A stretch of 64,000 nucleotides of DNA from Auanema rhodensis (lineage: Eukaryota > Animalia > Nematoda): positions 8,246,001 to 8,310,000 of the forward strand of contig OZ059899.1 of NCBI GenBank assembly GCA_964057225.1, read 5' to 3'. Made by a program: the position numbers and the translations under genes. Each line of letters opens with the position of its first letter. Within the stretch, counting starts at the first letter, position 1. The notes below the pieces were generated by a model. It saw nothing but the letters and a program-made list of their open reading frames with translations. It made no database searches and had not been told where the DNA came from. Positions 1 to 18,725 of the stretch are shown here, piece by piece.

Positions 1-2766
1 CTTAAACGATGCAAATCGTGGAGAACTCGATGTCCTCGTATCTGGTAAGAATCAGCAAAAGCTTTACAAGCAAAACCCTGAATTTATAACCATAACATTG
101 ATAAAAAAAAATATATATATATAATTAACGTTTTCAAAATTAAACAAAATAATAAAATAAAATTTAATCTAATATTTTAGGTATTTCAGATATCATGCAT
201 GTTTCCCTCTCCCATATCTTTAATATTTATGTTATACTCTTTTCAATTTAGCATGTATTCCATTTCCTATTCCTTATTTACATGTTTATTTTTAATTTTC
301 TGCTTTTATAAATTAACTATCATACATGCTTTGAACATATTTTTTCAGATCCAAAAGGTGGCCCAGTTCCTGTTCGATGTTATAAACAACAAGATGATAG
401 TTATTGGGTTGAATTCACTCCAGAGCAAACTGGAACACATACGATTGAAGTTACATTTGGAGATGTTGCTGTATCTGGATCACCCTTCCGTTGTGAAGTT
501 GTGGATCCAAAGCAAGTTGTTGTCCGTGGAGTACCTGACAGCATTGTACTTCGTCATGCTACCACTTTTAATGGTAAAACAATCGCTGCAATGTCTCATT
601 TTCACATTGTTATTCAGTTAATCGTGGTGAAGCTGGAACTGGCGATTTGCTAGTTGATGTCACTGATCCATCAGGAACTCCATTGAAGTTAGATTTATTA
701 AAATCTCCTGGAGGGGAAGAACGATACACCTTCTTGCCTAATCAAACTGGTCCGCATAAGATAAACTTACGTATGTCTGGGTTCCAAGTTCCAGGTGAGT
801 AGTTTTAATAAATAAATTTTTATATGAAATATTCAGGTTATCCACAAACTGTTAATGTTGGAGAACAAGAATTACCAACCGTCTATGGTGCAGCTATTGA
901 TCAATCCATCAAGATCAATGAGCCAGCTAGTTTGATATTCGATCCTAAAAGTATGCACGGAGGTCTCAAAATATACGTTAATGGTCCACAAAATACTAAA
1001 ATCCATCACAACGTTATGCGTCGTCCAAACGGAACATCAGAAATCGTTTTCTATCCGGAAGAAGTTGGAATCCACAAAGTCAATATTGATTTCAACAACA
1101 AGCCTTTGAAAGGTTTCTTTAAAAATTGATTACCTAGTTCATGAAATAAATTGCAGGTAGTCCTTTCTCTGTTCAAGTAGTTGATCCATCTAAAGTTATC
1201 GTCAATGATTTGGACATGGATCGGGATGGATGTCTGCTTTTGCGATTGGGTCACAACAACATGTTTGACGTGGATGCTACGGCAGCCGGACCCGGTAAGT
1301 ATAATTTGATGAAATAGTTAAATACATAAATGTTTATCAATCAACTTGAATAGTATAAATTCATTCAGGCAAACTTCGTGCCGAAGTTCGAGATGCGGAC
1401 AACGTTTTGTTACGCGACGGTCCGGAAGTCGACGATCTCGGATACGGCAAGTATCGTGTAGCCTTCTCTCCACGTCAACCCGGACGGTATGAAAGCATCA
1501 TGTTCATGATTACAATTATAACTTTATGTTTTAGATATTCCATTTTCTTGTTCTGGAATGAATTACCAGTAGACGGAGCATATCCAGTTCGTGCTCGTTC
1601 CGGAAATGATGAATTACCCTCAACATCAAAACATACAGTGGCTCATACTCAACAAGTTGTGTCACATGGGCCATCTGGATCGACTGGAGCATCATCGTCA
1701 TCGCCTATCACCCATAAAAGGTAAACTGATTATTGAGATCATAGATTAATCTCTAAGAGAATTTAAAAATAAATAAAAGTTAATGTTCTCCTTTTCAGAG
1801 ACAAATCTAATTCATCTGCTGTTATGACTGCTTCTGCTGCTTCTAATAAGGTTTGTTGTACTTTCTTATTTTTCTAATTTATATTTGTTTAGGTTATGCA
1901 AGAGCCTAGCAATACACCAGCTGATTTGATCAATGTTGATGCCTCAACTCTGAAAATAGGAATAATCGGCGAAGAATTGAAAACTTTGATTGATACAAGA
2001 AGATCTGGACCAGGCCAACTATCAGCTCAATGCATGGGTCCTGTAAAACTAGCTTATTGTGAATTATATGATCATCGCGATGGAACCTATACTTTGAATA
2101 TTCGACCGGCTGAAGTTGGAAAACACACTCTGACTATTAAGTATAATGATGCTCATGTTCGAGGAAGTCCATTCCTTATTCATGTTTCTAATCCACCTGA
2201 TCCATCCAAGGTTCGAGTGTATGGACCTGGTGTTGAACACGGAATCCTTTCATTGTATGTTACAATCCTGTTTTTATTTTGTTTTACTATACATTTTCAG
2301 ATTTAAATCAAACTTTGTTGTTGAAACTCGTGGAGCAGGTGCTGGACAGCTGACTGTTCGAGTACGTGGTCCAAAAGGAGCATTCAATGTAGAAATGCAG
2401 CGGGAAAAGAAGAACGAACGCACAATTCATTGCAAATATGAACCAAGGGAACCTGGAGATTACCAAGTTGAAGTGAAATGGCATGGCGAGCATGTACCAG
2501 GAAGTCCATTCTTGGTGATGATTGTTGATACGGAGCAAGAATTATCCCGCTTTCTGCGAGGTGAAGCTCCATCACCATCTCCAGCAACACCATTTATTCC
2601 CCCTGGATGGGTAGGCCCTCCACCACCAATGTTTGGTGGCATGGGAGGACCTCCAGGAATGCGTGGACAACCTTATATGGTAGGATTACCATCACCAATA
2701 GGACCTATGGGCCCAATACCATATGGCGCTCCACCACCACCACGTCATAAAGGAAAATATCATTAA
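1..2766 (+). CDS. fln-2: Filamin (fln-2/jitterbug type), 3' part; 5' end lies outside the window. Exons: <1-44, 349-573, 618-794, 837-1112, 1157-1294, 1369-1486, 1535-1720, 1799-1850, 1893-2254, 2301-2766
   Basis: GT..AG introns join the exons in frame into tandem filamin Ig-like repeats (e.g. YWVEFTPEQTGTHTIEVTFGDVAVSGSPF, DHRDGTYTLNIRPAEVGKHTLTIKYNDAHVRGSPF). The last repeat, ETRGAGAGQLTVRVRGPKGAFNVEMQR...EVKWHGEHVPGSPFLVMIVDTEQEL, matches my recollection of Drosophila Jitterbug/C. elegans FLN-2. It is followed by a Pro/Gly-rich tail and TAA at 2764-2766. Orthologue assignment is from memory. Confidence 0.9.
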
Positions 2767-3211
2767 GAGAAAACAGATTATTGTTATAAACTAGTTAAAT
2801 TTTCAAAATTCTTCATATATATTATATATTATATAACTCCATTTCACATGTGATATATTATTAATTATGATAGTAATAGTAGCTCAATATACTGTCTACT
2901 TATCTTATATTTTTATTGTTTTCACAAAAACTTCATATTATACCATTACATCAAATCAATGAAATCCCTTCCATAATCTTTCTAATTACTCATCTGCCAA
3001 TTAAACCAAGAAGAAATTATTTTTGTTTTTCACTGCTCAGCCGAAATGTTTATTAGTTCATATATTCTATTTGTATATGGACATACTAGATTATATTTTT
3101 TCTTTTTTGAAATATATAAAAGATTATATTAAATATGTTTTATGAAATTATATATATGAGTGAAACAATATAATACTAAAATATCTAACAAGTACAAAAA
3201 GTTATAGAACC

Positions 3212-3512
3212 ACTGAGCGTCGTGGCGGGCGCTTGTGAGCCGGCTTCTAGGCAGTAGATGTTTGTGGATGAAGTGAGCTCAGGAGTTCTGGTTCAATTGT
3301 ATGCTACAACGACCGGGCGTCCAAGCCAAGCGTTGCGTCACCAGGGACTGACTTTCGAAAGAAAGACTGCCCCGGGTGGACAAGGAGAGGTGTAAGGCCC
3401 AGGCCCGCAAGGGAGCAAGCAAACGCCTCCGCGCGTTGCAGTGGTTGGATAGCGCCCATGAGTACTGTCTTCTGTCCAGCCTGAGCAACATCTTCAAACC
3501 AACCATCGTTTT
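3212..3512 (+). ncRNA. Metazoan SRP RNA (7SL), copy 1 of 42
   Basis: Colinear with metazoan 7SL over ~300 nt. 5' ACTGAGCGTCGTGGCGGGCGCTTGTGA compares with human GCCGGGCGCGGTGGCGCGTGCCTGTAG, and the Alu UGUNR motif is at 3234-3238. CAGGAGTTCTGG is present; helix 5 pairs GCTCAGG (3277-3283) with CCTGAGC (3480-3486). Helix 6 is CTTTC-GAAA-GAAAG (3352-3365). Helix 8 GGCCCAGGCCCGCAAGGGAGCAAG carries the SRP54-binding CAGG/AGCA loop and a GNRA tetraloop (human GGCCCAGGTCGGAAACGGAGCAGG). The 3' end CCAGCCTGAGCAACAT is followed by TTTT. Confidence 0.96.
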
Positions 3513-3520
3513 GAATTTTT
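3509..3520 (+). terminator. RNA polymerase III terminator (T4 then T5), repeated in every unit
   Basis: TTTT-GAA-TTTTT lies directly after the SRP 3' end. In units 14, 29 and 31 the second run is interrupted (TTGTT). Confidence 0.8.
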
Positions 3521-3533
3521 CAATCTCGAGCTC

Positions 3534-3563
3534 ATGTGCTGCAATTTGCGATATGTAGCACGT
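3534..3563. other. Spacer hairpin ATGTGCTGCA-N10-TGTAGCACGT (units 1-41)
   Basis: 10-bp stem (8 Watson-Crick pairs plus 2 G.U pairs on the + strand) with a 10-nt loop, extendable by CTC/GAG. Confidence 0.8.
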
Positions 3564-3581
3564 AGAGTAAGGTAGAGAACC

Positions 3582-6500
3582 ACTGAGCGTCGTGGCGGGC
3601 GCTTGTGAGCCGGCTTCTAGGCAGTAGATGTTTGTGGATGAAGTGAGCTCAGGAGTTCTGGTTCAGTTGTATGCTACAACGACCGGGCGTCCAAGCCAAG
3701 CGTTGCGTCACCAGGGACTGACTTTCGAAAGAAAGACTGCCCCGGGTGGACAAGGAGAGGTGTAAGGCCCAGGCCCGCAAGGGAGCAAGCAAAAGCCTCC
3801 GCGCGTTGCAGTGGTTGGATAGCGCCCATGAGTACTGTCTTCTGTCCAGCCTGAGCAACATCTTCAAACCAACCATCGTTTTGAATTTTTCAATCTCGAG
3901 CTCATGTGCTGCAATTTGCGATATGTAGCACGTAGAGTAAGGTAGAGAACCACTGAGCGTCGTGGCGGGCGCTTGTGAGCCGGCTTCTAGGCAGTAGATG
4001 TTTGTGGATGAAGTGAGCTCAGGAGTTCTGGTTCAGTTGTATGCTACAACGACCGGGCGTCCAAGCCAAGCGTTGCGTCACCAGGGACTGACTTTCGAAA
4101 GAAAGACTGCCCCGGGTGGACAAGGAGAGGTGTAAGGCCCAGGCCCGCAAGGGAGCAAGCAAAAGCCTCCGCGCGTTGCAGTGGTTGGATAGCGCCCATG
4201 AGTACTGTCTTCTGTCCAGCCTGAGCAACATCTTCAAACCAACCATCGTTTTGAATTTTTCAATCTCGAGCTCATGTGCTGCAATTTGCGATATGTAGCA
4301 CGTAGAGTAAGGTAGAGAACCACTGAGCGTCGTGGCGGGCGCTTGTGAGCCGGCTTCTAGGCAGTAGATGTTTGTGGATGAAGTGAGCTCAGGAGTTCTG
4401 GTTCAGTTGTATGCTACAACGACCGGGCGTCCAAGCCAAGCGTTGCGTCACCAGGGACTGACTTTCGAAAGAAAGACTGGCCTCCGCGCGTTGCAGTGGT
4501 TGGATAGCGCCCATGAGTACTGTCTTCTGTCCAGCCTGAGCAACATCTTCAAACCAACCATCGTTTTGAATTTTTCAATCTCGAGCTCATGTGCTGCAAT
4601 TTGCGATATGTAGCACGTAGAGTAAGGTAGAGAACCACTGAGCGTCGTGGCGGGCGCTTGTGAGCCGGCTTCTAGGCAGTAGATGTTTGTGGATGAAGTG
4701 AGCTCAGGAGTTCTGGTTCAGTTGTATGCTACAACGACCGGGCGTCCAAACCAAGCGTTGCGTCACCAGGGACTGACTTTCGAAAGAAAGACTGCCCCGG
4801 GTGGACAAGGAGAGGTGTAAGGCCCAGGCCCGCAAGGGAGCAAGCAAAAGCCTCCGCGCGTTGCAGTGGTTGGATAGCGCCCATGAGTACTGTCTTCTGT
4901 CCAGCCTGAGCAACATCTTCAAACCAACCATCGTTTTGAATTTTTCAATCTCGAGCTCATGTGCTGCAATTTGCGATATGTAGCACGTAGAGTAAGGTAG
5001 AGAACCACTGAGCGTCGTGGCGGGCGCTTGTGAGCCGGCTTCTAGGCAGTAGATGTTTGTGGATGAAGTGAGCTCAGGAGTTCTGGTTCAGTTGTATGCT
5101 ACAACGACCGGGCGTCCAAGCCAAGCGTTGCGTCACCAGGAACTGACTTTCGAAAGAAAGACTGCCCCGGGTGGACAAGGAGAGGTGTAAGGCCCAGGCC
5201 CGCAAGGGAGCAAGCAAAAGCCTCCGCGCGTTGCAGTGGTTGGATAGCGCCCATGAGTACTGTCTTCTGTCCAGCCTGAGCAACATCTTCAAACCAACCA
5301 TCGTTTTGAATTTTTCAATCTCGAGCTCATGTGCTGCAATTTGCGATATGTAGCACGTAGAGTAAGGTAGAGAACCACTGAGCGTCGTGGCGGGCGCTTG
5401 TGAGCCGGCTTCTAGGCAGTAGATGTTTGTGGATGAAGTGAGCTCAGGAGTTCTGGTTCAGTTGTATGCTACAACGACCGGGCGTCCAAGCCAAGCGTTG
5501 CGTCACCAGGGACTGACTTTCGAAAGAAAGACTGCCCCGGGTGGACAAGGAGAGGTGTAAGGCCCAGGCCCGCAAGGGAGCAAGCAAAAGCCTCCGCGCG
5601 TTGCAGTGGTTGGATAGCGCCCATGAGTACTGTCTTCTGTCCAGCCTGAGCAACATCTTCAAACCAACCATCGTTTTGAATTTTTCAATCTCGAGCTCAT
5701 GTGCTGCAATTCGCGATATGTAGCACGTAGAGTAAGGTAGAGAACCACTGAGCGTCGTGGCGGGCGCTTGTGAGCCGCCTTCTAGGCAGTAGATGTTTGT
5801 GGATGAAGTGAGCTCAGGAGTTCTGGTTCAGTTGTATGCTACAACGACCGGGCGTCCAAGCCAAGCGTTGCGTCACCAGGGACTGACTTTCGAAAGAAAG
5901 ACTGCCCCGGGTGGACAAGGAGAGGTGTAAGGCCCAGGCCCGCAAGGGAGCAAGCAAAAGCCTCCGCGCGTTGCAGTGGTTGGATAGCGCCCATGAGTAC
6001 TGTCTTCTGTCCAGCCTGAGCAACATCTTCAAACCAACCATCGTTTTGAATTTTTCAATCTCGAGCTCATGTGCTGCAATTTGCGATATGTAGCACGTAG
6101 AGTAAGGTAGAGAACCACTGAGCGTCGTGGCGGGCGCTTGTGAGCCGGCTTCTAGGCAGTAGATGTTTGTGGATGAAGTGAGCTCAGGAGTTCTGGTTCA
6201 GTTGTATGCTACAACGACCGGGCGTCCAAGCCAAGCGTTGCGTCACCAGGGACGGACTTTCGAAAGAAAGACTGCCCCGGGTGGACAAGGAGAGGTGTAA
6301 GGCCCAGGCCCGCAAGGGAGCAAGCAAAAGCCTCCGCGCGTTGCAGTGGTTGGATAGCGCCCATGAGTACTGTCTTCTGTCCAGCCTGAGCAACATCTTC
6401 AAACCAACCATCGTTTTGAATTTTTCAATCTCGAGCTCATGTGCTGCAATTTGCGATATGTAGCACGTAGAGTAAGGTAGAGAACCACTGAGCGTCGTGG

Positions 6501-9500
6501 CGGGCGCTTGTGAGCCGGCTTCTAGGCAGTAGATGTTTGTGGATGAAGTGAGCTCAGGAGTTCTGGTTCAGTTGTATGCTACAACGACCGGGCGTCCAAG
6601 CCAAGCGTTGCGTCACCAGGGACTGACTTTCGAAAGAAAGACTGCCCCGGGTGGACAAGGAGAGGTGTAAGGCCCAGGCCCGCAAGGGAGCAAGCAAAAG
6701 CCTCCGCGCGTTGCAGTGGTTGGATAGCGCCCATGAGTACTGTCTTCTGTCCAGCCTGAGCAACATCTTCAAACCAACCATCGTTTTGAATTTTTCAATC
6801 TCGAGCTCATGTGCTGCAATTTGCGATATGTAGCACGTAGAGTAAGGTAGAGAACCACTGAGCGTCGTGGCGGGCGCTTGTGAGCCGGCTTCTAGGCAGT
6901 AGATGTTTGTGGATGAAGTGAGCTCAGGAGTTCTGGTTCAGTTGTATGCTACAACGACCGGGCGTCCAAGCCAAGCGTTGCGTCACCAGGGACTGACTTT
7001 CGAAAGAAAGACTGCCCCGGGTGGACAAGGAGAGGTGTAAGGCCCAGGCCCGCAAGGGAGCAAGCAAAAGCCTCCGCGCGTTGCAGTGGTTGGATAGCGC
7101 CCATGAGTACTGTCTTCTGTCCAGCCTGAGCAACATCTTCAAACCAACCATCGTTTTGAATTTTTCAATCTCGAGCTCATGTGCTGCAATTTGCGATATG
7201 TAGCACGTAGAGTAAGGTAGAGAACCACTGAGCGTCGTGGCGGGCGCTTGTGAGCCGGCTTCTAGGCAGTAGATGTTTGTGGATGAAGTGAGCTCAGGAG
7301 TTCTGGTTCAGTTGTATGCTACAACGACCGGGCGTCCAAGCCAAGCGTTGCGTCACCAGGGACTGACTTTCGAAAGAAAGACTGCCCCGGGTGGACAAGG
7401 AGAGGTGTAAGGCCCAGGCCCGCAAGGGAGCAAGCAAAAGCCTCCGCGCGTTGCAGTGGTTGGATAGCGCCCATGAGTACTGTCTTCTGTCCAGCCTGAG
7501 CAACATCTTCAAACCAACCATCGTTTTGAATTTTTCAATCTCGAGCTCATGTGCTGCAATTTGCGATATGTAGCACGTAGAGTAAGGTAGAGAACCACTG
7601 AGCGTCGTGGCGGGCGCTTGTGAGCCGGCTTCTAGGCAGTAGATGTTTGTGGATGAAGTGAGTTCAGGAGTTCTGGTTCAGTTGTATGCTACAACGACCG
7701 GGCGTCCAAGCCAAGCGTTGCGTCACCAGGGACTGACTTTCGAAAGAAAGACTGCCCCGGGTGGACAAGGAGAGGTGTAAGGCCCAGGCCCGCAAGGGAG
7801 CAAGCAAAAGCCTCCGCGCGTTGCAGTGGTTGGATAGCGCCCATGAGTACTGTCTTCTGTCCAGCCTGAGCAACATCTTCAAACCAACCATCGTTTTGAA
7901 TTTTTCAATCTCGAGCTCATGTGCTGCAATTTGCGATATGTAGCACGTAGAGTAAGGTAGAGAACCACTGAGCGTCGTGGCGGGCGCTTGTGAGCCGGCT
8001 TCTAGGCAGTAGATGTTTGTGGATGAAGTGAGTTCAGGAGTTCTGGTTCAGTTGTATGCTACAACGACCGGGCGTCCAAGCCAAGCGTTGCGTCACCAGG
8101 GACTGACTTTCGAAAGAAAGACTGCCCCGGGTGGACAAGGAGAGGTGTAAGGCCCAGGCCCGCAAGGGAGCAAGCAAAAGCCTCCGCGCGTTGCAGTGGT
8201 TGGATAGCGCCCATGAGTACTGTCTTCTGTCCAGCCTGAGCAACATCTTCAAACCAACCATCGTTTTGAATTGTTCAATCTCGAGCTCATGTGCTGCAAT
8301 TTGCGATATGTAGCACGTAGAGTAAGGTAGAGAACCACTGAGCGTCGTGGCGGGCGCTTGTGAGCCGGCTTCTAGGCAGTAGATGTTTGTGGATGAAGTG
8401 AGCTCAGGAGTTCTGGTTCAGTTGTATGCTACAACGACCGGGCGTCCAAGCCAAGCGTTGCGTCACCAGGGACTGACTTTCGAAAGAAAGACTGCCCCGG
8501 GTGGACAAGGAGAGGTGTAAGGCCCAGGCCCGCAAGGGAGCAAGCAAAAGCCTCCTCGCGTTGCAGTGGTTGGATAGCGCCCATGAGTACTGTCTTCTGT
8601 CCAGCCTGAGCAACATCTTCAAACCAACCATCGTTTTGAATTTTTCAATCTCGAGCTCATGTGCTGCAATTCGCGATATGTAGCACGTAGAGTAAGGTAG
8701 AGAACCACTGAGCGTCGTGGCGGGCGCTTGTGAGCCGGCTTCTAGGCAGTAGATGTTTGTGGATGAAGTGAGTTCAGGAGTTCTGGTTCAGTTGTATGCT
8801 ACAACGACCGGGCGTCCAAGCCAAGCGTTGCGTCACCAGGGACTGACTTTCGAAAGAAAGACTGCCCCGGGTGGACAAGGAGAGGTGTAAGGCCCAGGCC
8901 CGCAAGGGAGCAAGCAAAAGCCTCCGCGCGTTGCAGTGGTTGGATAGCGCCCATGAGTACTGTCTTCTGTCCAGCCTGAGCAACATCTTCAAACCAACCA
9001 TCGTTTTGAATTTTTCAATCTCGAGCTCATGTGCTGCAATTTGCGATATGTAGCACGTAGAGTAAGGTAGAGAACCACTGAGCGTCGTGGCGGGCGCTTG
9101 TGAGCCGGCTTCTAGGCAGTAGATGTTTGTGGATGAAGTGAGCTCAGGAGTTCTGGTTCAGTTGTATGCTACAACGACCGGGCGTCCAAGCCAAGCGTTG
9201 CGTCACCAGGGACTGACTTTCGAAAGAAAGACTGCCCCGGGTGGACAAGGAGAGGTGTAAGGCCCAGGCCCGCAAGGGAGCAAGCAAAAGCCTCCGCGCG
9301 TTGCAGTGGTTGGATAGCGCCCATGAGTACTGTCTTCTGTCCAGCCTGAGCAACATCTTCAAACCAACCATCGTTTTGAATTTTTCAATCTCGAGCTCAT
9401 GTGCTGCAATTTGCGATATGTAGCACGTAGAGTAAGGTAGAGAACCACTGAGCGTCGTGGCGGGCGCTTGTGAGCCGGCTTCTAGGCAGTAGATGTTTGT

Positions 9501-12500
9501 GGATGAAGTGAGTTCAGGAGTTCTGGTTCAGTTGTATGCTACAACGACCGGGCGTCCAAGCCAAGCGTTGCGTCACCAGGGACTGACTTTCGAAAGAAAG
9601 ACTGCCCCGGGTGGACAAGGAGAGGTGTAAGGCCCAGGCCCGCAAGGGAGCAAGCAAAAGCCTCCGCGCGTTGCAGTGGTTGGATAGCGCCCATGAGTAC
9701 TGTCTTCTGTCCAGCCTGAGCAACATCTTCAAACCAACCATCGTTTTGAATTTTTCAATCTCGAGCTCATGTGCTGCAATTTGCGATATGTAGCACGTAG
9801 AGTAAGGTAGAGAACCACTGAGCGTCGTGGCGGGCGCTTGTGAGCCGGCTTCTAGGCAGTAGATGTTTGTGGATGAAGTGAGCTCAGGAGTTCTGGTTCA
9901 GTTGTATGCTACAACGACCGGGCGTCCAAGCCAAGCGTTGCGTCACCAGGGACTGACTTTCGAAAGAAAGACTGCCCCGGGTGGACAAGGAGAGGTGTAA
10001 GGCCCAGGCCCGCAAGGGAGCAAGCAAAAGCCTCCGCGCGTTGCAGTGGTTGGATAGCGCCCATGAGTACTGTCTTCTGTCCAGCCTGAGCAACATCTTC
10101 AAACCAACCATCGTTTTGAATTTTTCAATCTCGAGCTCATGTGCTGCAATTCGCGATATGTAGCACGTAGAGTAAGGTAGAGAACCACTGAGCGTCGTGG
10201 CGGGCGCTTGTGAGCCGGCTTCTAGGCAGTAGATGTTTGTGGATGAAGTGAGTTCAGGAGTTCTGGTTCAGTTGTATGCTACAACGACCGGGCGTCCAAG
10301 CCAAGCGTTGCGTCACCAGGGACTGACTTTCGAAAGAAAGACTGCCCCGGGTGGACAAGGAGAGGTGTAAGGCCCAGGCCCGCAAGGGAGCAAGCAAAAG
10401 CCTCCGCGCGTTGCAGTGGTTGGATAGCGCCCATGAGTACTGTCTTCTGTCCAGCCTGAGCAACATCTTCAAACCAACCATCGTTTTGAATTTTTCAATC
10501 TCGAGCTCATGTGCTGCAGTTTGCGATATGTAGCACGTAGAGTAAGGTAGAGAACCACTGAGCGTCGTGGCGGGCGCTTGTGAGCCGGCTTCTAGGCAGT
10601 AGATGTTTGTGGATGAAGTGAGTTCAGGAGTTCTGGTTCAGTTGTATGCTACAACGACCGGGCGTCCAAGCCAAACGTTGCGTCACCAGGGACTGACTTT
10701 CGAAAGAAAGACTGCCCCGGGTGGACAAGGAGAGGTGTAAGGCCCAGGCCCGCAAGGGAGCAAGCAAAAGCCTCCGCGCGTTGCAGTGGTTGGATAGCGC
10801 CCATGAGTACTGTCTTCTGTCCAGCCTGAGCAACATCTTCAAACCAACCATCGTTTTGAATTTTTCAATCTCGAGCTCATGTGCTGCAATTCGCGATATG
10901 TAGCACGTAGAGTAAGGTAGAGAACCACTGAGCGTCGTGGCGGGCGCTTGTGAGCCGCCTTCTAGGCAGTAGATGTTTGTGGATGAAGTGAGCTCAGGAG
11001 TTCTGGTTCAGTTGTATGCTACAACGACCGGGCGTCCAAGCCAAGCGTTGCGTCACCAGGGACTGACTTTCGAAAGAAAGACTGCCCCGGGTGGACAAGG
11101 AGAGGTGTAAGGCCCAGGCCCGCAAGGGAGCAAGCAAAAGCCTCCGCGCGTTGCAGTGGTTGGATAGCGCCCATGAGTACTGTCTTCTGTCCAGCCTGAG
11201 CAACATCTTCAAACCAACCATCGTTTTGAATTTTTCAATCTCGAGCTCATGTGCTGCAATTTGCGATATGTAGCACGTAGAGTAAGGTAGAGAACCACTG
11301 AGCGTCGTGGCGGGCGCTTGTGAGCCGGCTTCTAGGCAGTAGATGTTTGTGGATGAAGTGAGCTCAGGAGTTCTGGTTCAGTTGTATGCTACAACGACCG
11401 GGCGTCCAAGCCAAGCGTTGCGTCACCAGGGACGGACTTTCGAAAGAAAGACTGCCCCGGGTGGACAAGGAGAGGTGTAAGGCCCAGGCCCGCAAGGGAG
11501 CAAGCAAAAGCCTCCGCGCGTTGCAGTGGTTGGATAGCGCCCATGAGTACTGTCTTCTGTCCAGCCTGAGCAACATCTTCAAACCAACCATCGTTTTGAA
11601 TTTTTCAATCTCGAGCTCATGTGCTGCAATTTGCGATATGTAGCACGTAGAGTAAGGTAGAGAACCACTGAGCGTCGTGGCGGGCGCTTGTGAGCCGGCT
11701 TCTAGGCAGTAGATGTTTGTGGATGAAGTGAGCTCAGGAGTTCTGGTTCAGTTGTATGCTACAACGACCGGGCGTCCAAGCCAAGCGTTGCGTCACCAGG
11801 GACTGACTTTCGAAAGAAAGACTGCCCCGGGTGGACAAGGAGAGGTGTAAGGCCCAGGCCCGCAAGGGAGCAAGCAAAAGCCTCCGCGCGTTGCAGTGGT
11901 TGGATAGCGCCCATGAGTACTGTCTTCTGTCCAGCCTGAGCAACATCTTCAAACCAACCATCGTTTTGAATTTTTCAATCTCGAGCTCATGTGCTGCAAT
12001 TTGCGATATGTAGCACGTAGAGTAAGGTAGAGAACCACTGAGCGTCGTGGCGGGCGCTTGTGAGCCGGCTTCTAGGCAGTAGATGTTTGTGGATGAAGTG
12101 AGCTCAGGAGTTCTGGTTCAGTTGTATGCTACAACGACCGGGCGTCCAAGCCAAGCGTTGCGTCACCAGGGACTGACTTTCGAAAGAAAGACTGCCCCGG
12201 GTGGACAAGGAGAGGTGTAAGGCCCAGGCCCGCAAGGGAGCAAGCAAAAGCCTCCGCGCGTTGCAGTGGTTGGATAGCGCCCATGAGTACTGTCTTCTGT
12301 CCAGCCTGAGCAACATCTTCAAACCAACCATCGTTTTGAATTTTTCAATCTCGAGCTCATGTGCTGCAATTTGCGATATGTAGCACGTAGAGTAAGGTAG
12401 AGAACCACTGAGCGTCGTGGCGGGCGCTTGTGAGCCGGCTTCTAGGCAGTAGATGTTTGTGGATGAAGTGAGCTCAGGAGTTCTGGTTCAGTTGTATGCT

Positions 12501-15500
12501 ACAACGACCGGGCGTCCAAGCCAAGCGTTGCGTCACCAGGGACTGACTTTCGAAAGAAAGACTGCCCCGGGTGGACAAGGAGAGGTGTAAGGCCCAGGCC
12601 CGCAAGGGAGCAAGCAAAAGCCTCCGCGCGTTGCAGTGGTTGGATAGCGCCCATGAGTACTGTCTTCTGTCCAGCCTGAGCAACATCTTCAAACCAACCA
12701 TCGTTTTGAATTTTTCAATCTCGAGCTCATGTGCTGCAATTTGCGATATGTAGCACGTAGAGTAAGGTAGAGAACCACTGAGCGTCGTGGCGGGCGCTTG
12801 TGAGCCGGCTTCTAGGCAGTAGATGTTTGTGGATGAAGTGAGCTCAGGAGTTCTGGTTCAGTTGTATGCTACAACGACCGGGCGTCCAAGCCAAGCGTTG
12901 CGTCACCAGGGACTGACTTTCGAAAGAAAGACTGCCCCGGGTGGACAAGGAGAGGTGTAAGGCCCAGGCCCGCAAGGGAGCAAGCAAAAGCCTCCGCGCG
13001 TTGCAGTGGTTGGATAGCGCCCATGAGTACTGTCTTCTGTCCAGCCTGAGCAACATCTTCAAACCAACCATCGTTTTGAATTTTTCAATCTCGAGCTCAT
13101 GTGCTGCAATTTGCGATATGTAGCACGTAGAGTAAGGTAGAGAACCACTGAGCGTCGTGGCGGGCGCTTGTGAGCCGGCTTCTAGGCAGTAGATGTTTGT
13201 GGATGAAGTGAGTTCAGGAGTTCTGGTTCAGTTGTATGCTACAACGACCGGGCGTCCAAGCCAAGCGTTGCGTCACCAGGGACTGACTTTCGAAAGAAAG
13301 ACTGCCCCGGGTGGACAAGGAGAGGTGTAAGGCCCAGGCCCGCAAGGGAGCAAGCAAAAGCCTCCGCGCGTTGCAGTGGTTGGATAGCGCCCATGAGTAC
13401 TGTCTTCTGTCCAGCCTGAGCAACATCTTCAAACCAACCATCGTTTTGAATTTTTCAATCTCGAGCTCATGTGCTGCAATTTGCGATATGTAGCACGTAG
13501 AGTAAGGTAGAGAACCACTGAGCGTCGTGGCGGGCGCTTGTGAGCCGGCTTCTAGGCAGTAGATGTTTGTGGATGAAGTGAGTTCAGGAGTTCTGGTTCA
13601 GTTGTATGCTACAACGACCGGGCGTCCAAGCCAAGCGTTGCGTCACCAGGGACTGACTTTCGAAAGAAAGACTGCCCCGGGTGGACAAGGAGAGGTGTAA
13701 GGCCCAGGCCCGCAAGGGAGCAAGCAAAAGCCTCCGCGCGTTGCAGTGGTTGGATAGCGCCCATGAGTACTGTCTTCTGTCCAGCCTGAGCAACATCTTC
13801 AAACCAACCATCGTTTTGAATTGTTCAATCTCGAGCTCATGTGCTGCAATTTGCGATATGTAGCACGTAGAGTAAGGTAGAGAACCACTGAGCGTCGTGG
13901 CGGGCGCTTGTGAGCCGGCTTCTAGGCAGTAGATGTTTGTGGATGAAGTGAGCTCAGGAGTTCTGGTTCAGTTGTATGCTACAACGACCGGGCGTCCAAG
14001 CCAAGCGTTGCGTCACCAGGGACTGACTTTCGAAAGAAAGACTGCCCCGGGTGGACAAGGAGAGGTGTAAGGCCCAGGCCCGCAAGGGAGCAAGCAAAAG
14101 CCTCCTCGCGTTGCAGTGGTTGGATAGCGCCCATGAGTACTGTCTTCTGTCCAGCCTGAGCAACATCTTCAAACCAACCATCGTTTTGAATTTTTCAATC
14201 TCGAGCTCATGTGCTGCAATTCGCGATATGTAGCACGTAGAGTAAGGTAGAGAACCACTGAGCGTCGTGGCGGGCGCTTGTGAGCCGGCTTCTAGGCAGT
14301 AGATGTTTGTGGATGAAGTGAGTTCAGGAGTTCTGGTTCAGTTGTATGCTACAACGACCGGGCGTCCAAGCCAAGCGTTGCGTCACCAGGGACTGACTTT
14401 CGAAAGAAAGACTGCCCCGGGTGGACAAGGAGAGGTGTAAGGCCCAGGCCCGCAAGGGAGCAAGCAAAAGCCTCCGCGCGTTGCAGTGGTTGGATAGCGC
14501 CCATGAGTACTGTCTTCTGTCCAGCCTGAGCAACATCTTCAAACCAACCATCGTTTTGAATTGTTCAATCTCGAGCTCATGTGCTGCAATTTGCGATATG
14601 TAGCACGTAGAGTAAGGTAGAGAACCACTGAGCGTCGTGGCGGGCGCTTGTGAGCCGGCTTCTAGGCAGTAGATGTTTGTGGATGAAGTGAGCTCAGGAG
14701 TTCTGGTTCAGTTGTATGCTACAACGACCGGGCGTCCAAGCCAAGCGTTGCGTCACCAGGGACTGACTTTCGAAAGAAAGACTGCCCCGGGTGGACAAGG
14801 AGAGGTGTAAGGCCCAGGCCCGCAAGGGAGCAAGCAAAAGCCTCCTCGCGTTGCAGTGGTTGGATAGCGCCCATGAGTACTGTCTTCTGTCCAGCCTGAG
14901 CAACATCTTCAAACCAACCATCGTTTTGAATTTTTCAATCTCGAGCTCATGTGCTGCAATTCGCGATATGTAGCACGTAGAGTAAGGTAGAGAACCACTG
15001 AGCGTCGTGGCGGGCGCTTGTGAGCCGGCTTCTAGGCAGTAGATGTTTGTGGATGAAGTGAGTTCAGGAGTTCTGGTTCAGTTGTATGCTACAACGACCG
15101 GGCGTCCAAGCCAAGCGTTGCGTCACCAGGGACTGACTTTCGAAAGAAAGACTGCCCCGGGTGGACAAGGAGAGGTGTAAGGCCCAGGCCCGCAAGGGAG
15201 CAAGCAAAAGCCTCCGCGCGTTGCAGTGGTTGGATAGCGCCCATGAGTACTGTCTTCTGTCCAGCCTGAGCAACATCTTCAAACCAACCATCGTTTTGAA
15301 TTTTTCAATCTCGAGCTCATGTGCTGCAATTTGCGATATGTAGCACGTAGAGTAAGGTAGAGAACCACTGAGCGTCGTGGCGGGCGCTTGTGAGCCGGCT
15401 TCTAGGCAGTAGATGTTTGTGGATGAAGTGAGCTCAGGAGTTCTGGTTCAGTTGTATGCTACAACGACCGGGCGTCCAAGCCAAGCGTTGCGTCACCAGG

Positions 15501-18500
15501 GACTGACTTTCGAAAGAAAGACTGCCCCGGGTGGACAAGGAGAGGTGTAAGGCCCAGGCCCGCAAGGGAGCAAGCAAAAGCCTCCGCGCGTTGCAGTGGT
15601 TGGATAGCGCCCATGAGTACTGTCTTCTGTCCAGCCTGAGCAACATCTTCAAACCAACCATCGTTTTGAATTTTTCAATCTCGAGCTCATGTGCTGCAAT
15701 TTGCGATATGTAGCACGTAGAGTAAGGTAGAGAACCACTGAGCGTCGTGGCGGGCGCTTGTGAGCCGGCTTCTAGGCAGTAGATGTTTGTGGATGAAGTG
15801 AGTTCAGGAGTTCTGGTTCAGTTGTATGCTACAACGACCGGGCGTCCAAGCCAAGCGTTGCGTCACCAGGGACTGACTTTCGAAAGAAAGACTGCCCCGG
15901 GTGGACAAGGAGAGGTGTAAGGCCCAGGCCCGCAAGGGAGCAAGCAAAAGCCTCCGCGCGTTGCAGTGGTTGGATAGCGCCCATGAGTACTGTCTTCTGT
16001 CCAGCCTGAGCAACATCTTCAAACCAACCATCGTTTTGAATTTTTCAATCTCGAGCTCATGTGCTGCAATTTGCGATATGTAGCACGTAGAGTAAGGTAG
16101 AGAACCACTGAGCGTCGTGGCGGGCGCTTGTGAGCCGGCTTCTAGGCAGTAGATGTTTGTGGATGAAGTGAGTTCAGGAGTTCTGGTTCAGTTGTATGCT
16201 ACAACGACCGGGCGTCCAAGCCAAACGTTGCGTCACCAGGGACTGACTTTCGAAAGAAAGACTGCCCCGGGTGGACAAGGAGAGGTGTAAGGCCCAGGCC
16301 CGCAAGGGAGCAAGCAAAAGCCTCCGCGCGTTGCAGTGGTTGGATAGCGCCCATGAGTACTGTCTTCTGTCCAGCCTGAGCAACATCTTCAAACCAACCA
16401 TCGTTTTGAATTTTTCAATCTCGAGCTCATGTGCTGCAATTTGCGATATGTAGCACGTAGAGTAAGGTAGAGAACCACTGAGCGTCGTGGCGGGCGCTTG
16501 TGAGCCGGCTTCTAGGCAGTAGATGTTTGTGGATGAAGTGAGCTCAGGAGTTCTGGTTCAGTTGTATGCTACAACGACCGGGCGTCCAAGCCAAGCGTTG
16601 CGTCACCAGGGACTGACTTTCGAAAGAAAGACTGCCCCGGGTGGACAAGGAGAGGTGTAAGGCCCAGGCCCGCAAGGGAGCAAGCAAAAGCCTCCGCGCG
16701 TTGCAGTGGTTGGATAGCGCCCATGAGTACTGTCTTCTGTCCAGCCTGAGCAACATCTTCAAACCAACCATCGTTTTGAATTTTTCAATCTCGAGCTCAT
16801 GTGCTGCAATTTGCGATATGTAGCACGTAGAGTAAGGTAGAGAACCACTGAGCGTCGTGGCGGGCGCTTGTGAGCCGGCTTCTAGGCAGTAGATGTTTGT
16901 GGATGAAGTGAGCTCAGGAGTTCTGGTTCAGTTGTATGCTACAACGACCGGGCGTCCAAGCCAAGCGTTGCGTCACCAGGGACTGACTTTCGAAAGAAAG
17001 ACTGCCCCGGGTGGACAAGGAGAGGTGTAAGGCCCAGGCCCGCAAGGGAGCAAGCAAAAGCCTCCGCGCGTTGCAGTGGTTGGATAGCGCCCATGAGTAC
17101 TGTCTTCTGTCCAGCCTGAGCAACATCTTCAAACCAACCATCGTTTTGAATTTTTCAATCTCGAGCTCATGTGCTGCAATTTGCGATATGTAGCACGTAG
17201 AGTAAGGTAGAGAACCACTGAGCGTCGTGGCGGGCGCTTGTGAGCCGGCTTCTAGGCAGTAGATGTTTGTGGATGAAGTGAGCTCATGAGTTCTGGTTCA
17301 GTTGTATGCTACAACGACCGGGCGTCCAAGCCAAGCGTTGCGTCACCAGGGACTGACTTTCGAAAGAAAGACTGCCCCGGGTGGACAAGGAGAGGTGTAA
17401 GGCCCAGGCCCGCAAGGGAGCAAGCAAAAGCCTCCGCGCGTTGCAGTGGTTGGATAGCGCCCATGAGTACTGTCTTCTGTCCAGCCTGAGCAACATCTTC
17501 AAACCAACCATCGTTTTGAATTTTTCAATCTCGAGCTCATGTGCTGCAATTCGCGATATGTAGCACGTAGAGTAAGGTAGAGAACCACTGAGCGTCGTGG
17601 CGGGCGCTTGTGAGCCGGCTTCTAGGCAGTAGATGTTTGTGGATGAAGTGAGTTCAGGAGTTCTGGTTCAGTTGTATGCTACAACGACCGGGCGTCCAAG
17701 CCAAGCGTTGCGTCACCAGGGACTGACTTTCGAAAGAAAGACTGCCCCGGGTGGACAAGGAGAGGTGTAAGGCCCAGGCCCGCAAGGGAGCAAGCAAAAG
17801 CCTCCGCGCGTTGCAGTGGTTGGATAGCGCCCATGAGTACTGTCTTCTGTCCAGCCTGAGCAACATCTTCAAACCAACCATCGTTTTGAATTTTTCAATC
17901 TCGAGCTCATGTGCTGCAATTTGCGATATGTAGCACGTAGAGTAAGGTAGAGAACCACTGAGCGTCGTGGCGGGCGCTTGTGAGCCGGCTTCTAGGCAGT
18001 AGATGTTTGTGGATGAAGTGAGCTCAGGAGTTCTGGTTCAGTTGTATGCTACAACGACCGGGCGTCCAAGCCAAGCGTTGCGTCACCAGGGACTGACTTT
18101 CGAAAGAAAGACTGCCCCGGGTGGACAAGGAGAGGTGTAAGGCCCAGGCCCGCAAGGGAGCAAGCAAAAGCCTCCGCGCGTTGCAGTGGTTGGATAGCGC
18201 CCATGAGTACTGTCTTCTGTCCAGCCTGAGCAACATCTTCAAACCAACCATCGTTTTGAATTTTTCAATCTCGAGCTCATGTGCTGCAATTTGCGATATG
18301 TAGCACGTAGAGTAAGGTAGAGAACCACTGAGCGTCGTGGCGGGCGCTTGTGAGCCGGCTTCTAGGCAGTAGATGTTTGTGGATGAAGTGAGCTCAGGAG
18401 TTCTGGTTCAGTTGTATGCTACAACGACCGGGCGTCCAAGCCAAGCGTTGCGTCACCAGGGACTGACTTTCGAAAGAAAGACTGCCCCGGGTGGACAAGG

Positions 18501-18627
18501 AGAGGTGTAAGGCCCAGGCCCGCAAGGGAGCAAGCAAAAGCCTCCGCGCGTTGCAGTGGTTGGATAGCGCCCATGAGTACTGTCTTCTGTCCAGCCTGAG
18601 CAACATCTTCAAACCAACCATCGTTTT
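3582..18627 (+). ncRNA. SRP RNA (7SL) copies 2-42, one per unit (RNA runs from about unit start +6 to +306); 40 of these 41 are full length
   Basis: Same sequence and motifs as copy 1, with only scattered SNPs. The last copy is at 18327-18627. Expression of individual copies cannot be determined from sequence. Confidence 0.93.
4322..4567 (+). pseudogene. SRP RNA copy 4 with a 55-nt S-domain deletion
   Basis: The junction GAAAGACTG|GCCTCCG at 4479/4480 removes CCCCGGGTGG...GCAAGCAAAA (55 nt), which includes the helix 8 SRP54-binding loop and tetraloop. Confidence 0.85.
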
Positions 18628-18645
18628 GAATTTTTCAATCTCGAG

Positions 18646-18725
18646 CAAAAATCAAAACTATAACAAAATTACGTGCTACATATCGCAAATTGCAGCACGT
18701 AATTTTGTTATAGTTTTGATTTTTG
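18646..18725. repeat. 80-bp palindrome with perfect 32-bp arms (possible MITE-like element)
   Basis: CAAAAATCAAAACTATAACAAAATTACGTGCT (18646-18677) is the exact reverse complement of 18694-18725, around a 16-nt centre. It is followed by TA. The inverted repeat is certain; MITE identity is inference. Confidence 0.9.

What the first reader, a model, noticed from the sequence alone, without database searches (positions are those of the whole stretch)
3206..18646. A 42-copy, rDNA-like tandem array of full-length SRP (7SL) RNA genes
Seen: what looks like a 370-bp satellite is an intact 7SL gene (Alu domain, helices 5, 6 and 8, Pol III T-run) plus a 69-nt spacer, repeated 42 times head to tail at about 99% identity or better. 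It sits between the 3' ends of two convergent protein genes whose stop codons would otherwise be ~1 kb apart. Known: animals usually have only a few dispersed functional 7SL genes, with extra copies arising as retroposed SINEs or pseudogenes; tandem arrays are typical of 5S, SL1, U2 and rDNA. I do not know of a described SRP array of this size. Inference: this is either dosage amplification of SRP RNA (e.g. for oocyte stockpiling or heavy secretion) or a young satellite formed from a housekeeping RNA gene.
Basis: partly seen in the sequence, partly recalled or inferred. Interest (0 to 1): 0.9.

Follow-up and report, generated by a model that had tools for sequence, protein, structure and literature searches.

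The report
Tandem array of SRP RNA genes
A worm chromosome carries 42 head-to-tail, almost identical copies of the gene for the RNA core of the signal recognition particle; the array is real, but it is one of two such arrays in a genome that keeps most of its abundant small-RNA genes in arrays, and whether it is used was not shown.

Summary
Window 3206-18646 holds 42 head-to-tail units on the + strand. Forty-one are 370 bp; unit 4 is 315 bp. Each full unit is a complete Metazoa_SRP gene (RF00017, 198-207 bits against a cut-off of 70) followed by T-runs and a 69-nt spacer. Mean pairwise identity is 99.56%. Unit 4 has lost helix 8 and is dead.

The array is not unique. The genome holds 76 SRP genes at three loci: this array, a 33-copy 361-bp array on contig C6 (already noted by this scan as s1-401402), and a solo gene 295 kb upstream. 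The three gene types are only 84-88% identical. They differ largely by compensatory or pair-preserving changes, so each lineage evolved under structural constraint.

U1, U2, U4, U6, SL1-like and 5S genes are also arrayed in this genome, while RNase P and MRP RNA are single. Assembled contigs (no raw reads) from three studies reach from the left flank 30 nt into the repeat. They give rough unit/flank depth ratios of about 33, 45 and about 100.

Best reading (0.65): a working Pol III multigene array kept uniform by unequal exchange. Transcription was not shown. I found no paper describing SRP RNA arrays. Verdict: a new member of a known kind, of moderate interest.

The parts
3206..18646 (+). Whole array: 42 head-to-tail units (41 of 370 bp, one of 315 bp). 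It forms a 53% GC island in a roughly 33% GC background.
   Evidence: Tandem Repeats Finder starts the repeat at 3199, where similarity to the spacer begins (13 nt, imperfect).
3212..3509 (+). SRP RNA gene of unit 1, with private variants G85A and A213C. Its upstream sequence is unique flank, not array spacer.
   Evidence: RF00017 at 200.7 bits; variants. Contigs of three runs reach from the flank to 3235.
3582..3879 (+). SRP RNA gene of unit 2, identical to the array consensus and taken as the reference copy. It has the Alu domain (helices 2-4), helix 5, helix 6 with a GAAA loop, and helix 8 with a GCAA loop and the AGCA motif.
   Evidence: RF00017 at 204.8 bits over model positions 1-299; consensus; structure and pair table.
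3879..3890 (+). Double Pol III terminator, TTTT-GAA-TTTTT (unit positions 298-309). The motif TTTTGA(A/T)TTTTTC is the only part of the spacer shared with the C6 array.
   Evidence: Read directly from the sequence. That 4 or more T residues terminate Pol III is established knowledge.
3921..3927 (+). TATA-like box ATATGTA at -31 to -25 of the next gene (unit positions 340-346). It is invariant in all 41 spacers.
   Evidence: The U6 array of this genome has TTATGTAA at -31..-24, the C6 type has CAAATAGA at -30..-23 and the solo gene has GTATAACA at -31..-24. Promoter function is inferred, not shown.
4322..4636 (+). Unit 4, a dead copy. A 55-nt deletion of consensus positions 159-213 removes the 3' half of helix 6 and all of helix 8, the SRP54-binding site.
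   Evidence: RF00017 at 129.3 bits; pairwise alignment.
5747..10926 (+). Units 8-21, the first copy of a multi-unit block. Its order of variant units is G32C, T138G, three consensus units, C67T, C67T+T307G, G220T+T336C and so on.
   Evidence: One search lists the unit types. The order is non-random (0 of 2000 shuffles).
10927..16476 (+). Units 22-36, the second copy of the same block, with one extra consensus unit and a small internal re-duplication (units 31-32 repeat 29-30).
18327..18624 (+). Last SRP RNA gene (unit 42). It is followed by only 22 nt of spacer.
   Evidence: RF00017 at 204.8 bits; sequence.
18646..18725 (.). Terminal palindrome with 35-nt arms (97% complementary, 10 nt apart). 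Its centre, 18670-18698, is an inverted copy of spacer positions 325-353, which include the TATA-like box. It is unique in the genome.
1..3039 (+). 3' exons of a filamin gene (stop at 2764-2766) and its 3' UTR. A transcript-like contig ends at 3039.
   Evidence: PF00630 hits; ORFs; contig of run X10.
19207..24021 (-). 3' part of a convergent RasGAP-like gene (stop at 19207-19209).
   Evidence: ORFs. The exon at 20905-21120 carries the [12 protein letters not shown] motif and matches PF00616 below threshold (23.2 bits, E 7e-5).

Best explanation
The stretch is a true tandem array of 41 structurally intact SRP (7SL) RNA genes plus one dead copy. It is one of three SRP RNA loci in this nematode genome.

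**How each unit most likely works.** Each 370-bp unit is read as a self-contained RNA polymerase III transcription unit.
- A TATA-like box at -31/-25, probably together with internal control elements in the 5' Alu domain, would set the start at the A of ACUGAGCG.
- Transcription would stop at TTTT, with a second T-run 4 nt further on as a back-up.
- The product would be an RNA of about 300 nt that assembles into the signal recognition particle.

**How the array is maintained.** It grew and is kept uniform by unequal exchange or gene conversion between units, including duplication of blocks of about 14 units. It belongs to a genome-wide habit of keeping abundant small-RNA genes in arrays, which points to gene dosage.

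**Shown:**
- the array and its copy number to within a factor of about 1.3 (rough contig depth ratios only);
- the intact structure of the genes;
- evolution of this gene lineage under structural constraint;
- block duplication within the array;
- the genome-wide pattern of arrays.

**Inferred:**
- Pol III transcription;
- the promoter role of the TATA-like box;
- use of this RNA in SRP;
- dosage as the reason for the array.
For: **Structure.**
- All 41 full units match RF00017 over the whole model at about three times the gathering score.
- The conserved motifs are in place: UGGC loop, GGAGUUCUGG, GNAR loop of helix 6, CAGG...GNRA...AGCA of helix 8, and GGAUAGCGCCC (alignment).

**Constraint on this lineage.**
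- The three SRP gene types are 83.6-88.3% identical.
- Eight of 93 predicted pairs show changes on both sides that keep the pair.
- In the window lineage, 8 of 11 changed stem pairs stay paired: 4 are compensatory and 4 are single pair-preserving changes. By my own count of possible single substitutions, about a fifth of single changes would stay paired by chance.
- The unrooted branch lengths are 21 (window), 25 (C6) and 15 (solo), so this lineage is not accelerated.

**Variants within the array.** The commonest variant, C67T in 13 units, turns C-G into U-G and keeps the pair. G114A and T138G raise the Rfam score.

**Unit design.**
- The design is the same in both arrays although the spacers are unrelated: TTTT, 2-3 nt, then a T5-6 run.
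- An A/T-rich box lies at about -30 in five independent upstream contexts.
- The hexamer TATGTA lies at the same distance upstream as in the U6 array.

**Reality of the array.**
- Contigs from three runs of three studies reach from the left flank 30 nt into the repeat, which is the overlap expected of such contigs.
- The unit assembles as a circular 400-nt piece.
- Unit/flank depth ratios are 45 (X1), 32-35 (X5) and 89-109 (X6). A 7% side branch in X5 would fit G220T, which is in 3 of 42 units, but I did not confirm which variant it carries.
- Variant units occur in a repeated order (0 of 2000 shuffles).

**Genome-wide pattern.** U1, U2, U4, U6, SL1-like and 5S genes are arrayed, while RNase P and RNase MRP RNAs are single.
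Against: - No direct evidence of transcription. All runs were assembled contigs. The one run guessed to be RNA holds the unit only at low depth (11.9, against 50.6 for the filamin mRNA) and with the spacer included. DNA carry-over or read-through could explain that.
- This type has the lowest Rfam score of the three (205 against 228 and 214 bits) and the most non-standard pairs (5 against 2 and 1).
- Within the array, variable sites are no rarer in the gene than in the spacer (10/298 against 3/72, Fisher p = 0.72). Uniformity therefore reflects recent homogenisation, not visible selection.
- Four rare variants break a pair, and one unit is dead.
- The C6 array and the solo gene could supply all the SRP RNA.
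- The spacer holds no recognisable upstream element beyond the TATA-like box, and that box was noticed after the fact.
Confidence: 0.65

Rival explanations
1. The array is a young satellite built from a housekeeping gene. A once-functional SRP RNA paralogue was amplified by the same unequal-exchange process that makes other arrays in this genome. The array is silent or contributes little, and working SRP RNA comes from the C6 array and/or the solo gene.
For: - This type has the lowest Rfam score and the most broken pairs of the three.
- There is no excess conservation of gene over spacer inside the array.
- A dead copy and pair-breaking variants are tolerated.
- The possible RNA run holds the unit only at low depth and with the spacer.
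- This genome amplifies many short units.
Against: - Most stem changes in this lineage keep pairing, so it was functional for most of its 16% divergence.
- 41 of 42 copies are intact.
- The terminators and the -30 box are invariant.
- The commonest variant preserves its pair.
- The array is present in runs of three studies.
Confidence: 0.25
2. The two arrays encode two deliberately different SRP RNA isoforms that are used in different tissues or stages, as with the oocyte and somatic 5S gene families of Xenopus. This would give specialised SRP populations. It is a special case of the functional reading.
For: - The two arrays are each internally uniform (99.6% and above) but 16% different from each other.
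- Both kept their structure through compensatory change.
- Their spacers and upstream boxes differ.
- They lie at unrelated loci.
Against: There are no expression data of any kind. Differences between types fall mostly in helices 3-6, where sequence is free to vary. Divergent paralogues can arise simply from independent concerted evolution.
Confidence: 0.15
3. The array is an assembly artefact: one or a few genes wrongly expanded.
For: None found. Raw long reads could not be examined.
Against: - Unit contigs are about 33-45 times deeper than the single-copy flank in two runs of the same organism label or study.
- A 7% side branch in X5 fits the 3-in-42 frequency of G220T, if that is the variant it carries.
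- The ordered, block-duplicated pattern of variants is not what a mis-expanded repeat would give.
Confidence: 0.02
4. The copies are retroposed 7SL copies, that is SINE-like pseudogenes.
For: In mammals, 7SL expansions are retroposed and dispersed (PMC13197249; established knowledge on Alu and B1).
Against: - There is no A-tail and no target-site duplication.
- All copies are full length and head to tail.
- They share a spacer that includes non-transcribed upstream sequence.
- There are no dispersed copies: the genome-wide motif search finds only the three loci.
Confidence: 0.01

Closest known systems
Tandem 5S rRNA and spliced-leader (SL1) gene arrays of nematodes, such as the roughly 1-kb 5S/SL1 repeat of Caenorhabditis elegans (from my own knowledge)
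   Same: - Short units hold one small-RNA gene plus a short spacer that carries the promoter.
- All units point the same way.
- Tens to hundreds of copies stay near-identical through concerted evolution.
- 5S genes are also Pol III genes.
- This genome has such arrays too.
   Different: The gene is SRP RNA, for which I found no described array. The unit is very compact, with a 69-nt spacer. There are two separate arrays with different gene variants.
Tandem snRNA gene arrays, such as the human RNU2 6.1-kb and RNU1 arrays and the U1/U2 arrays of sea urchin and Xenopus (from my own knowledge)
   Same: A housekeeping small-RNA gene is amplified head to tail, varies in copy number and is homogenised by unequal exchange. 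U1, U2, U4 and U6 are arrayed in this genome.
   Different: Most of those are Pol II snRNA genes with units of several kb. Here the gene is a Pol III gene in a 370-bp unit.
Mouse 4.5SH RNA gene array, a 7SL/B1-derived small RNA in a tandem repeat of several kb with hundreds of copies (array layout and copy number from my own knowledge). The abstract of PMC10137851, shown, describes its 7SL origin and its TATA-like box at -31/-24.
   Same: It is a 7SL-related Pol III gene in a long tandem array, with internal promoter boxes plus a TATA-like box about 30 nt upstream.
   Different: 4.5SH is a short derivative with a new function, not a full SRP RNA. Its unit is kb-sized. Here every unit is a complete SRP RNA with both the Alu and S domains.
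Ordinary animal 7SL genes, which are few and dispersed or in small clusters (for example human RN7SL1/2/3 and the two adjacent Drosophila genes), and the 7SL-derived SINEs Alu and B1
   Same: The RNA family and fold are the same (RF00017), and the Pol III terminator is the same.
   Different: Copy number here is 42 + 33 + 1, arranged in tandem and not retroposed. Mammalian Metazoa_SRP expansions are dispersed and linked to transposable elements (PMC13197249).
Xenopus oocyte-type and somatic-type 5S gene families (from my own knowledge)
   Same: There are two separately homogenised arrays that encode sequence variants of one essential Pol III RNA.
   Different: Differential expression is documented for 5S. 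Nothing is known here.

Membership tests
Metazoa_SRP (Rfam RF00017), eukaryotic SRP / 7SL RNA | Covariance-model score above the curated gathering score, over the full model | tested here: met
   41 units score 197.8-207.0 bits against a gathering score of 70, over model positions 1-299. Unit 4 scores 129.3 bits with an internal deletion.
Metazoa_SRP (Rfam RF00017), eukaryotic SRP / 7SL RNA | Alu domain (helices 2, 3 and 4 with the UGGC loop) and S domain (helix 6 GNAR loop; helix 8 GNRA loop with the AGCA internal loop) | tested here: met
   The alignment shows GUGGCG, CUUUC-GAAA-GAAAG and CAGGCCC-GCAA-GGGAGCA. Pairs are listed.
Metazoa_SRP (Rfam RF00017), eukaryotic SRP / 7SL RNA | Base pairs maintained by covariation among homologues | tested here: met
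   Eight of 93 pairs show changes on both sides among the three paralogue types. In the window lineage, 8 of 11 changed pairs stay paired. Only three sequences were compared, and the structure was predicted from those same sequences, so the test is weak.
Metazoa_SRP (Rfam RF00017), eukaryotic SRP / 7SL RNA | Transcribed by Pol III into a stable RNA of about 300 nt that binds SRP9/14, SRP19, SRP54 and SRP68/72 | tested here: inconclusive
   T-run terminators are present. The only possible RNA run holds the unit at low depth together with the spacer, and contigs cannot show RNA ends or level. Protein binding cannot be tested with these tools.
Tandemly arrayed multigene family under concerted evolution (the 5S, rDNA and snRNA kind) | Head-to-tail units in one orientation, each holding a whole gene plus spacer | tested here: met
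   42 units on the + strand at 370-bp spacing.
Tandemly arrayed multigene family under concerted evolution (the 5S, rDNA and snRNA kind) | Much higher identity within an array than between arrays or paralogues | tested here: met
   Identity is 99.56% within the array, against 83.6% to the C6 type and 85.7% to the solo gene. The spacers are unrelated.
Tandemly arrayed multigene family under concerted evolution (the 5S, rDNA and snRNA kind) | Traces of unequal exchange: multi-unit block duplications and copy-number differences between individuals | tested here: met
   Units 8-21 are repeated as units 22-36 (0 of 2000 shuffles). Depth ratios of about 33, 45 and 100 in three runs hint at copy-number variation, but contig depths are rough.
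Satellite DNA (non-genic tandem repeat) | The repeat unit has no gene function and variation accumulates without regard to function | tested here: inconclusive
   Units are intact genes, yet variable sites are as frequent in the gene as in the spacer. Expression is unknown.
7SL-derived SINE or retropseudogene | Dispersed copies with an A-rich tail and target-site duplications, lacking upstream flank | tested here: not met
   There is no A-tail, and the spacer is shared between units and includes upstream sequence. The genome-wide motif search finds only three loci.

The most novel reading that the evidence does not exclude
This nematode makes two or three structurally distinct SRP RNA isoforms, 12-16% divergent, from separately homogenised loci: a 42-copy array, a 33-copy array and a solo gene. 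It deploys them differently, for example germline or embryo against soma, or high-secretion tissues. SRP would then be heterogeneous by design, as with the oocyte and somatic 5S genes of Xenopus. Arraying of abundant small-RNA genes would be a lineage-wide dosage strategy.
Probability: 0.15. Interest if true: 0.75.

Novelty: new member of a known kind. Interest (0 to 1): 0.45.

Why it matters
SRP RNA is normally described as a low-copy gene in animals, with extra copies arising by retroposition. Here essentially the whole SRP RNA gene complement (75 of 76 genes) sits in two compact arrays that carry different variants.

If the arrays are transcribed, three things follow:
- SRP RNA joins 5S, SL and snRNA genes as a family that can be organised and homogenised like rDNA.
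- The locus becomes a natural system for asking whether SRP RNA dosage is limiting.
- It also allows a test of whether distinct SRP RNA isoforms coexist in one animal.

The 370-bp unit is also a minimal natural Pol III cassette (a 69-nt spacer with a -30 box and a double terminator). That could help define nematode Pol III promoters.

On the practical side, such arrays look like satellites to repeat maskers and are easily lost from annotation. In this genome that would hide nearly all SRP RNA genes.

Tried and rejected
- **Own-genome DNA search with one unit.** It returned only the solo gene, because words that are very common in this genome are skipped. I replaced it with a 15-nt motif search that found all 76 copies.
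- **Metagenome scan with the same 15-mer.** It gave more than 120 single-match contigs, with no contig holding two copies. I take these as chance hits of a GC-rich word.
- **Single-sequence folding.** The MFE z-score is -0.07, no better than shuffles. Only the centroid resembles the SRP fold. The covariance-model score is the meaningful test.
- **Fixed-offset test for a higher-order repeat.** It was not significant (1249 of 5000 shuffles), because small insertions shift the register. Order-aware tests were significant.
- **Protein-coding reading of the array.** Rejected. In the stretch checked (3200-5400) the only ORF of 80 aa or more is one of 81 aa at the deleted unit, and 370 is not a multiple of 3.
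- **Homoeologous or segmental origin of the two arrays.** Rejected. The flanks of the C6 array and of the solo gene share no DNA or protein similarity with the window's flanks.
- **The palindrome as a transposon end.** Not supported. It is unique in the genome.
- **Pfam on the larger minus-strand ORFs to the right.** No hit. Only the exon with the FLR..PA..P motif gives a sub-threshold RasGAP match.
- **tRNA scan of the window.** None found.
- **Reads.** Only assembled contigs were available, so transcript ends, strand and level, and spanning long reads, could not be examined.
- **Literature.** Eight full-text searches found no paper on tandem SRP/7SL gene arrays. Matousek et al. 1999 (Gene 239:173, on hop 7SL gene organisation) is cited in PMC6212812 but is not in the library, so I could not check how those genes are arranged.
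- **Organism.** Names were coded, so the species was not identified beyond a nematode with SL1-like genes.

Full report

Yes.
- Tandem Repeats Finder reports a 370-bp period from 3199 to 18646 with 99% matches and no indels. A 315-bp step sits near 4165-4794.
- Rfam cmscan at gathering thresholds finds exactly 42 matches in the 64-kb window. All are RF00017 Metazoa_SRP and all are on the + strand.
- Forty-one of them cover the whole model (1-299) at 197.8-207.0 bits, against a gathering score of 70. One, at 4322-4564, scores 129.3 bits.
- The 5' motif of the gene occurs 42 times at 370-bp spacing, apart from one 315-bp step.
- Full units differ from the consensus at 0-3 of 370 positions. Mean pairwise identity of 40 full units is 99.56%.
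- The array is a 53% GC island in a background of about 33% GC.

**2. Anatomy of a unit** (reference copy 3582-3951)

- Positions 1-298 are the gene. Its Rfam alignment shows:
  - the Alu-domain UGGC loop;
  - GGAGUUCUGG in helix 5;
  - a helix 6 hairpin, CUUUC-GAAA-GAAAG;
  - a helix 8 hairpin, CAGGCCC-GCAA-GGGAGCA, with the conserved AGCA;
  - GGAUAGCGCCC.
- TTTT lies at 298-301 and a second run, TTTTT, at 305-309.
- The 69-nt spacer carries ATATGTA at -31 to -25 of the next gene.
- No variant falls between -31 and -1 in any of the 41 spacers.
- Unit 4 has lost consensus positions 159-213, which is the 3' half of helix 6 and the whole of helix 8. It cannot be functional.
- Unit 42 ends 22 nt after its T-run.
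- In the stretch checked, the array contains no ORF worth considering.

**3. Surroundings**

- Filamin repeats (PF00630) on the + strand end with a stop at 2764-2766.
- A transcript-like contig of run X10 ends at 3039. This probably marks the end of the 3' UTR.
- On the minus strand a gene has its stop at 19207-19209. One of its exons carries the RasGAP signature [12 protein letters not shown], with only a sub-threshold match to PF00616.
- Without the array the two stops would be 999 bp apart.

**4. The array is not alone**

- A search of the window's own 181-Mb assembly with RF00017 found a better-scoring set of SRP genes on contig C6 (228.5 bits).
- A 15-nt Alu-domain motif with up to one mismatch finds 76 sites in the genome, all on the + strand of their contigs:
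  - 33 on C6 at a 361-bp period;
  - 1 on C7 at 7,951,161;
  - the 42 of this window.
- Rfam confirms the 33 C6 genes (one cut by the locus end) and the solo gene at 214.5 bits.
- The C6 array is even more uniform than this one. The scan's first stage had already noted it (s1-401402).
- Identities between gene types are 83.6% (window against C6), 85.7% (window against solo) and 88.3% (C6 against solo).
- The spacers are unrelated apart from the terminator motif TTTTGA(A/T)TTTTTC.
- The flanks of the three loci share nothing. These are independent loci, not duplicated segments.

**5. Is this gene type under constraint?**

- In an alignment of the three types, RNAalifold predicts 93 pairs, essentially the SRP fold. 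Eight pairs have changes on both sides that keep the pair.
- I sorted the changes by lineage:
  - The window type changed 11 stem pairs: 4 compensatory, 4 single but pair-preserving, and 3 pair-breaking.
  - The C6 type has 1 + 5 + 1, plus one gain.
  - The solo type has 3 + 4 + 0, plus one gain.
- By my own count of the possible single substitutions, random single changes keep a Watson-Crick or G-U pair only about one time in five. The window lineage therefore evolved as a working structured RNA for most of its divergence.
- Its branch is not longer than the others (21, 25 and 15 lineage-specific sites).
- It does carry the most non-standard pairs (5 against 2 and 1) and the lowest Rfam score. 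Some relaxation cannot be excluded.
- The test is weak. It uses three sequences, and the structure was predicted from those same sequences.

**6. Variation inside the array**

- Thirteen sites vary: 10 of 298 in the gene and 3 of 72 in the spacer (Fisher p = 0.72). Uniformity is therefore due to recent homogenisation rather than to visible selection within the array.
- The commonest variant, C67T in 13 units, changes C-G to U-G.
- G114A and T138G raise the Rfam score.
- G220T (3 units), G119A (2 units), G135A and G71T each lower it by 5-7 bits.
- Variant units come in a repeated order. Units 8-21 recur as units 22-36, with one extra consensus unit and a local re-duplication.
- No shuffle out of 2000 reaches the observed number of repeated neighbour pairs or the observed common subsequence.
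- This is the signature of unequal exchange of blocks of about 5 kb. It also argues against a mis-assembled repeat.

**7. Independent samples** (contigs only; run and organism names coded)

- In runs from three studies, a contig with zero differences reaches from the filamin flank to 3235. That is 30 nt into the repeat, the overlap expected of such contigs.
- The unit assembles as a 400-nt circular piece (370 + 30).
- Unit/flank depth ratios are:
  - about 45 in X1 (2089 / 46.4);
  - about 32-35 in X5;
  - about 89-109 in X6.
- In X5 a side branch at 7% of the depth lies where G220T would fall. G220T is in 3 of 42 units, but I did not confirm which variant the branch carries.
- The tool warns that contig depths are not copy numbers. 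The array is also GC-rich relative to its flank. I take these figures only as showing tens of copies, possibly variable.
- Run X10, guessed to be RNA, holds the filamin transcript at depth 50.6 and a circular unit contig at 11.9 that includes the spacer.
- Slight DNA carry-over (42 copies at about 0.3x each) or read-through transcripts could explain that. It does not show expression.

**8. Genome context**

Own-genome Rfam searches show that arrays are the rule here for abundant small RNAs.

| RNA | Layout |
|---|---|
| SL1-like genes (54-62 bits, below the cut-off of 75, full length) | 252/504-bp spacing over about 360 kb of C3 |
| 5S | arrays on C3 |
| U6 | 226-bp units |
| U2 | units of about 2.46 kb |
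| U1 | 727-bp units |
| U4 | units of about 472-490 bp |
| RNase P RNA | one match |
| RNase MRP RNA | one match |

- Earlier scan notes list the same U6 and SL arrays and a tRNA-Val array.
- The U6 spacer has TTATGTAA at -31..-24, the same place as ATATGTA in the SRP spacer.
- The C6 type, the solo gene and both first units also have an A/T-rich box there.
- That fits a Pol III promoter with an upstream TATA-like box, as described for the 7SL-derived 4.5SH genes in the abstract of PMC10137851. I noticed the motif after the fact, and its role is inferred.

**9. Edges of the array**

- The right edge is an 80-nt palindrome (35-nt arms, 97% complementary), unique in the genome.
- Its centre, 18670-18698, is an exact inverted copy of spacer positions 325-353, TATA-like box included.
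- It suggests a hairpin-mediated event when the array end was formed or repaired. I did not resolve the history.
- The left junction shares only GTTATAG with the palindrome arm, which could be chance.

**10. Verdict**

- The array is real, and its units are complete SRP RNA genes.
- The best-supported reading (0.65) is a working Pol III multigene array under concerted evolution. It is one of three SRP loci and part of a genome-wide dosage-style layout.
- The main rival (0.25) is that this array is a recently amplified, little-used paralogue.
- Retroposition and assembly error are excluded or very unlikely.

**11. Novelty**

- Tandem arrays of small-RNA genes are a well-known kind (5S, SL, U1, U2, 4.5SH).
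- I found no report of SRP RNA arrays in eight full-text searches.
- In mammals, Metazoa_SRP expansions are dispersed and linked to transposable elements (PMC13197249).
- I class the array as a new member of a known kind. Interest is moderate, because the surprise is shared with many other arrays in the same genome and function is untested.
- The most novel reading still open is that the two arrays provide distinct SRP RNA isoforms for different contexts.

Noticed in passing
window 18646-18725: An 80-nt palindrome sits at the right edge of the array (35-nt arms, 97% complementary) and is unique in the genome. Its centre, 18670-18698, is an exact inverted copy of spacer positions 325-353, including the TATA-like box. 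This suggests a hairpin or fold-back event at the array end.
   Followed up: partly
window 3193-3211: Only the last 6-13 nt before gene 1 resemble the array spacer (AAGTTATAGAACC against AAGGTAGAGAACC). GTTATAG also occurs in the right arm of the terminal palindrome. This could be a trace of how the array arrived, or chance.
   Followed up: no
G000 contig C6:11119549-11131400 (L011:7550 to L014:9398): A second SRP RNA array: 33 units of 361 bp, RF00017 at 228.5 bits, almost no variation, an unrelated spacer, and a collagen-like ORF upstream.
   Followed up: yes
G000 contig C7:7951156-7951456 (L015:157-456): A solo SRP RNA gene of a third sequence type (214.5 bits) lies 295 kb upstream of the window array, with its own TATAA box at about -30 and a T5 terminator.
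   Followed up: partly
G000 contigs C1, C3, C4, C5: - Arrayed genes: U6 (226-bp units, C1 at 6.375-6.386 Mb), U2 (about 2.46 kb, C1 at 10.96-11.28 Mb), U1 (727 bp, C3 at 15.86-16.06 Mb), U4 (about 472-490 bp, C4 at 15.50-15.56 Mb), SL1-like (252/504 bp, C3 at 6.74-7.10 Mb) and 5S (C3 at 12.1-13.5 Mb).
- Single-copy genes: RNase P RNA (C3:6203621) and RNase MRP RNA (C5:6962133).
- The SL1-like and 5S arrays are separate, unlike in C. elegans.
   Followed up: partly
G000 contig C3:6741531-7099372: The SL1-like genes match RF00198 over its full length but score only 54-62 bits, below the gathering score of 75. Standard Rfam annotation would miss them.
   Followed up: no
window 3578-3582 (loose ends in run X5): Run X5 carries a different organism label but the same flank contig. 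It has contigs in which an SRP-like 5' end is preceded by two upstream sequences not seen at the three G000 loci. SRP loci may differ between samples, or a second organism may be present.
   Followed up: no
window 3206-3605 (run X6): In run X6 (third organism label, identical flank) the unit/flank depth ratio is about 90-110, against 33-45 in the other runs. This may be copy-number variation, or GC bias at low coverage.
   Followed up: no
window 2301-3039: A transcript-like contig of run X10 covers the last filamin exon and stops at 3039. That places the likely polyadenylation site about 170 nt before the array.
   Followed up: no
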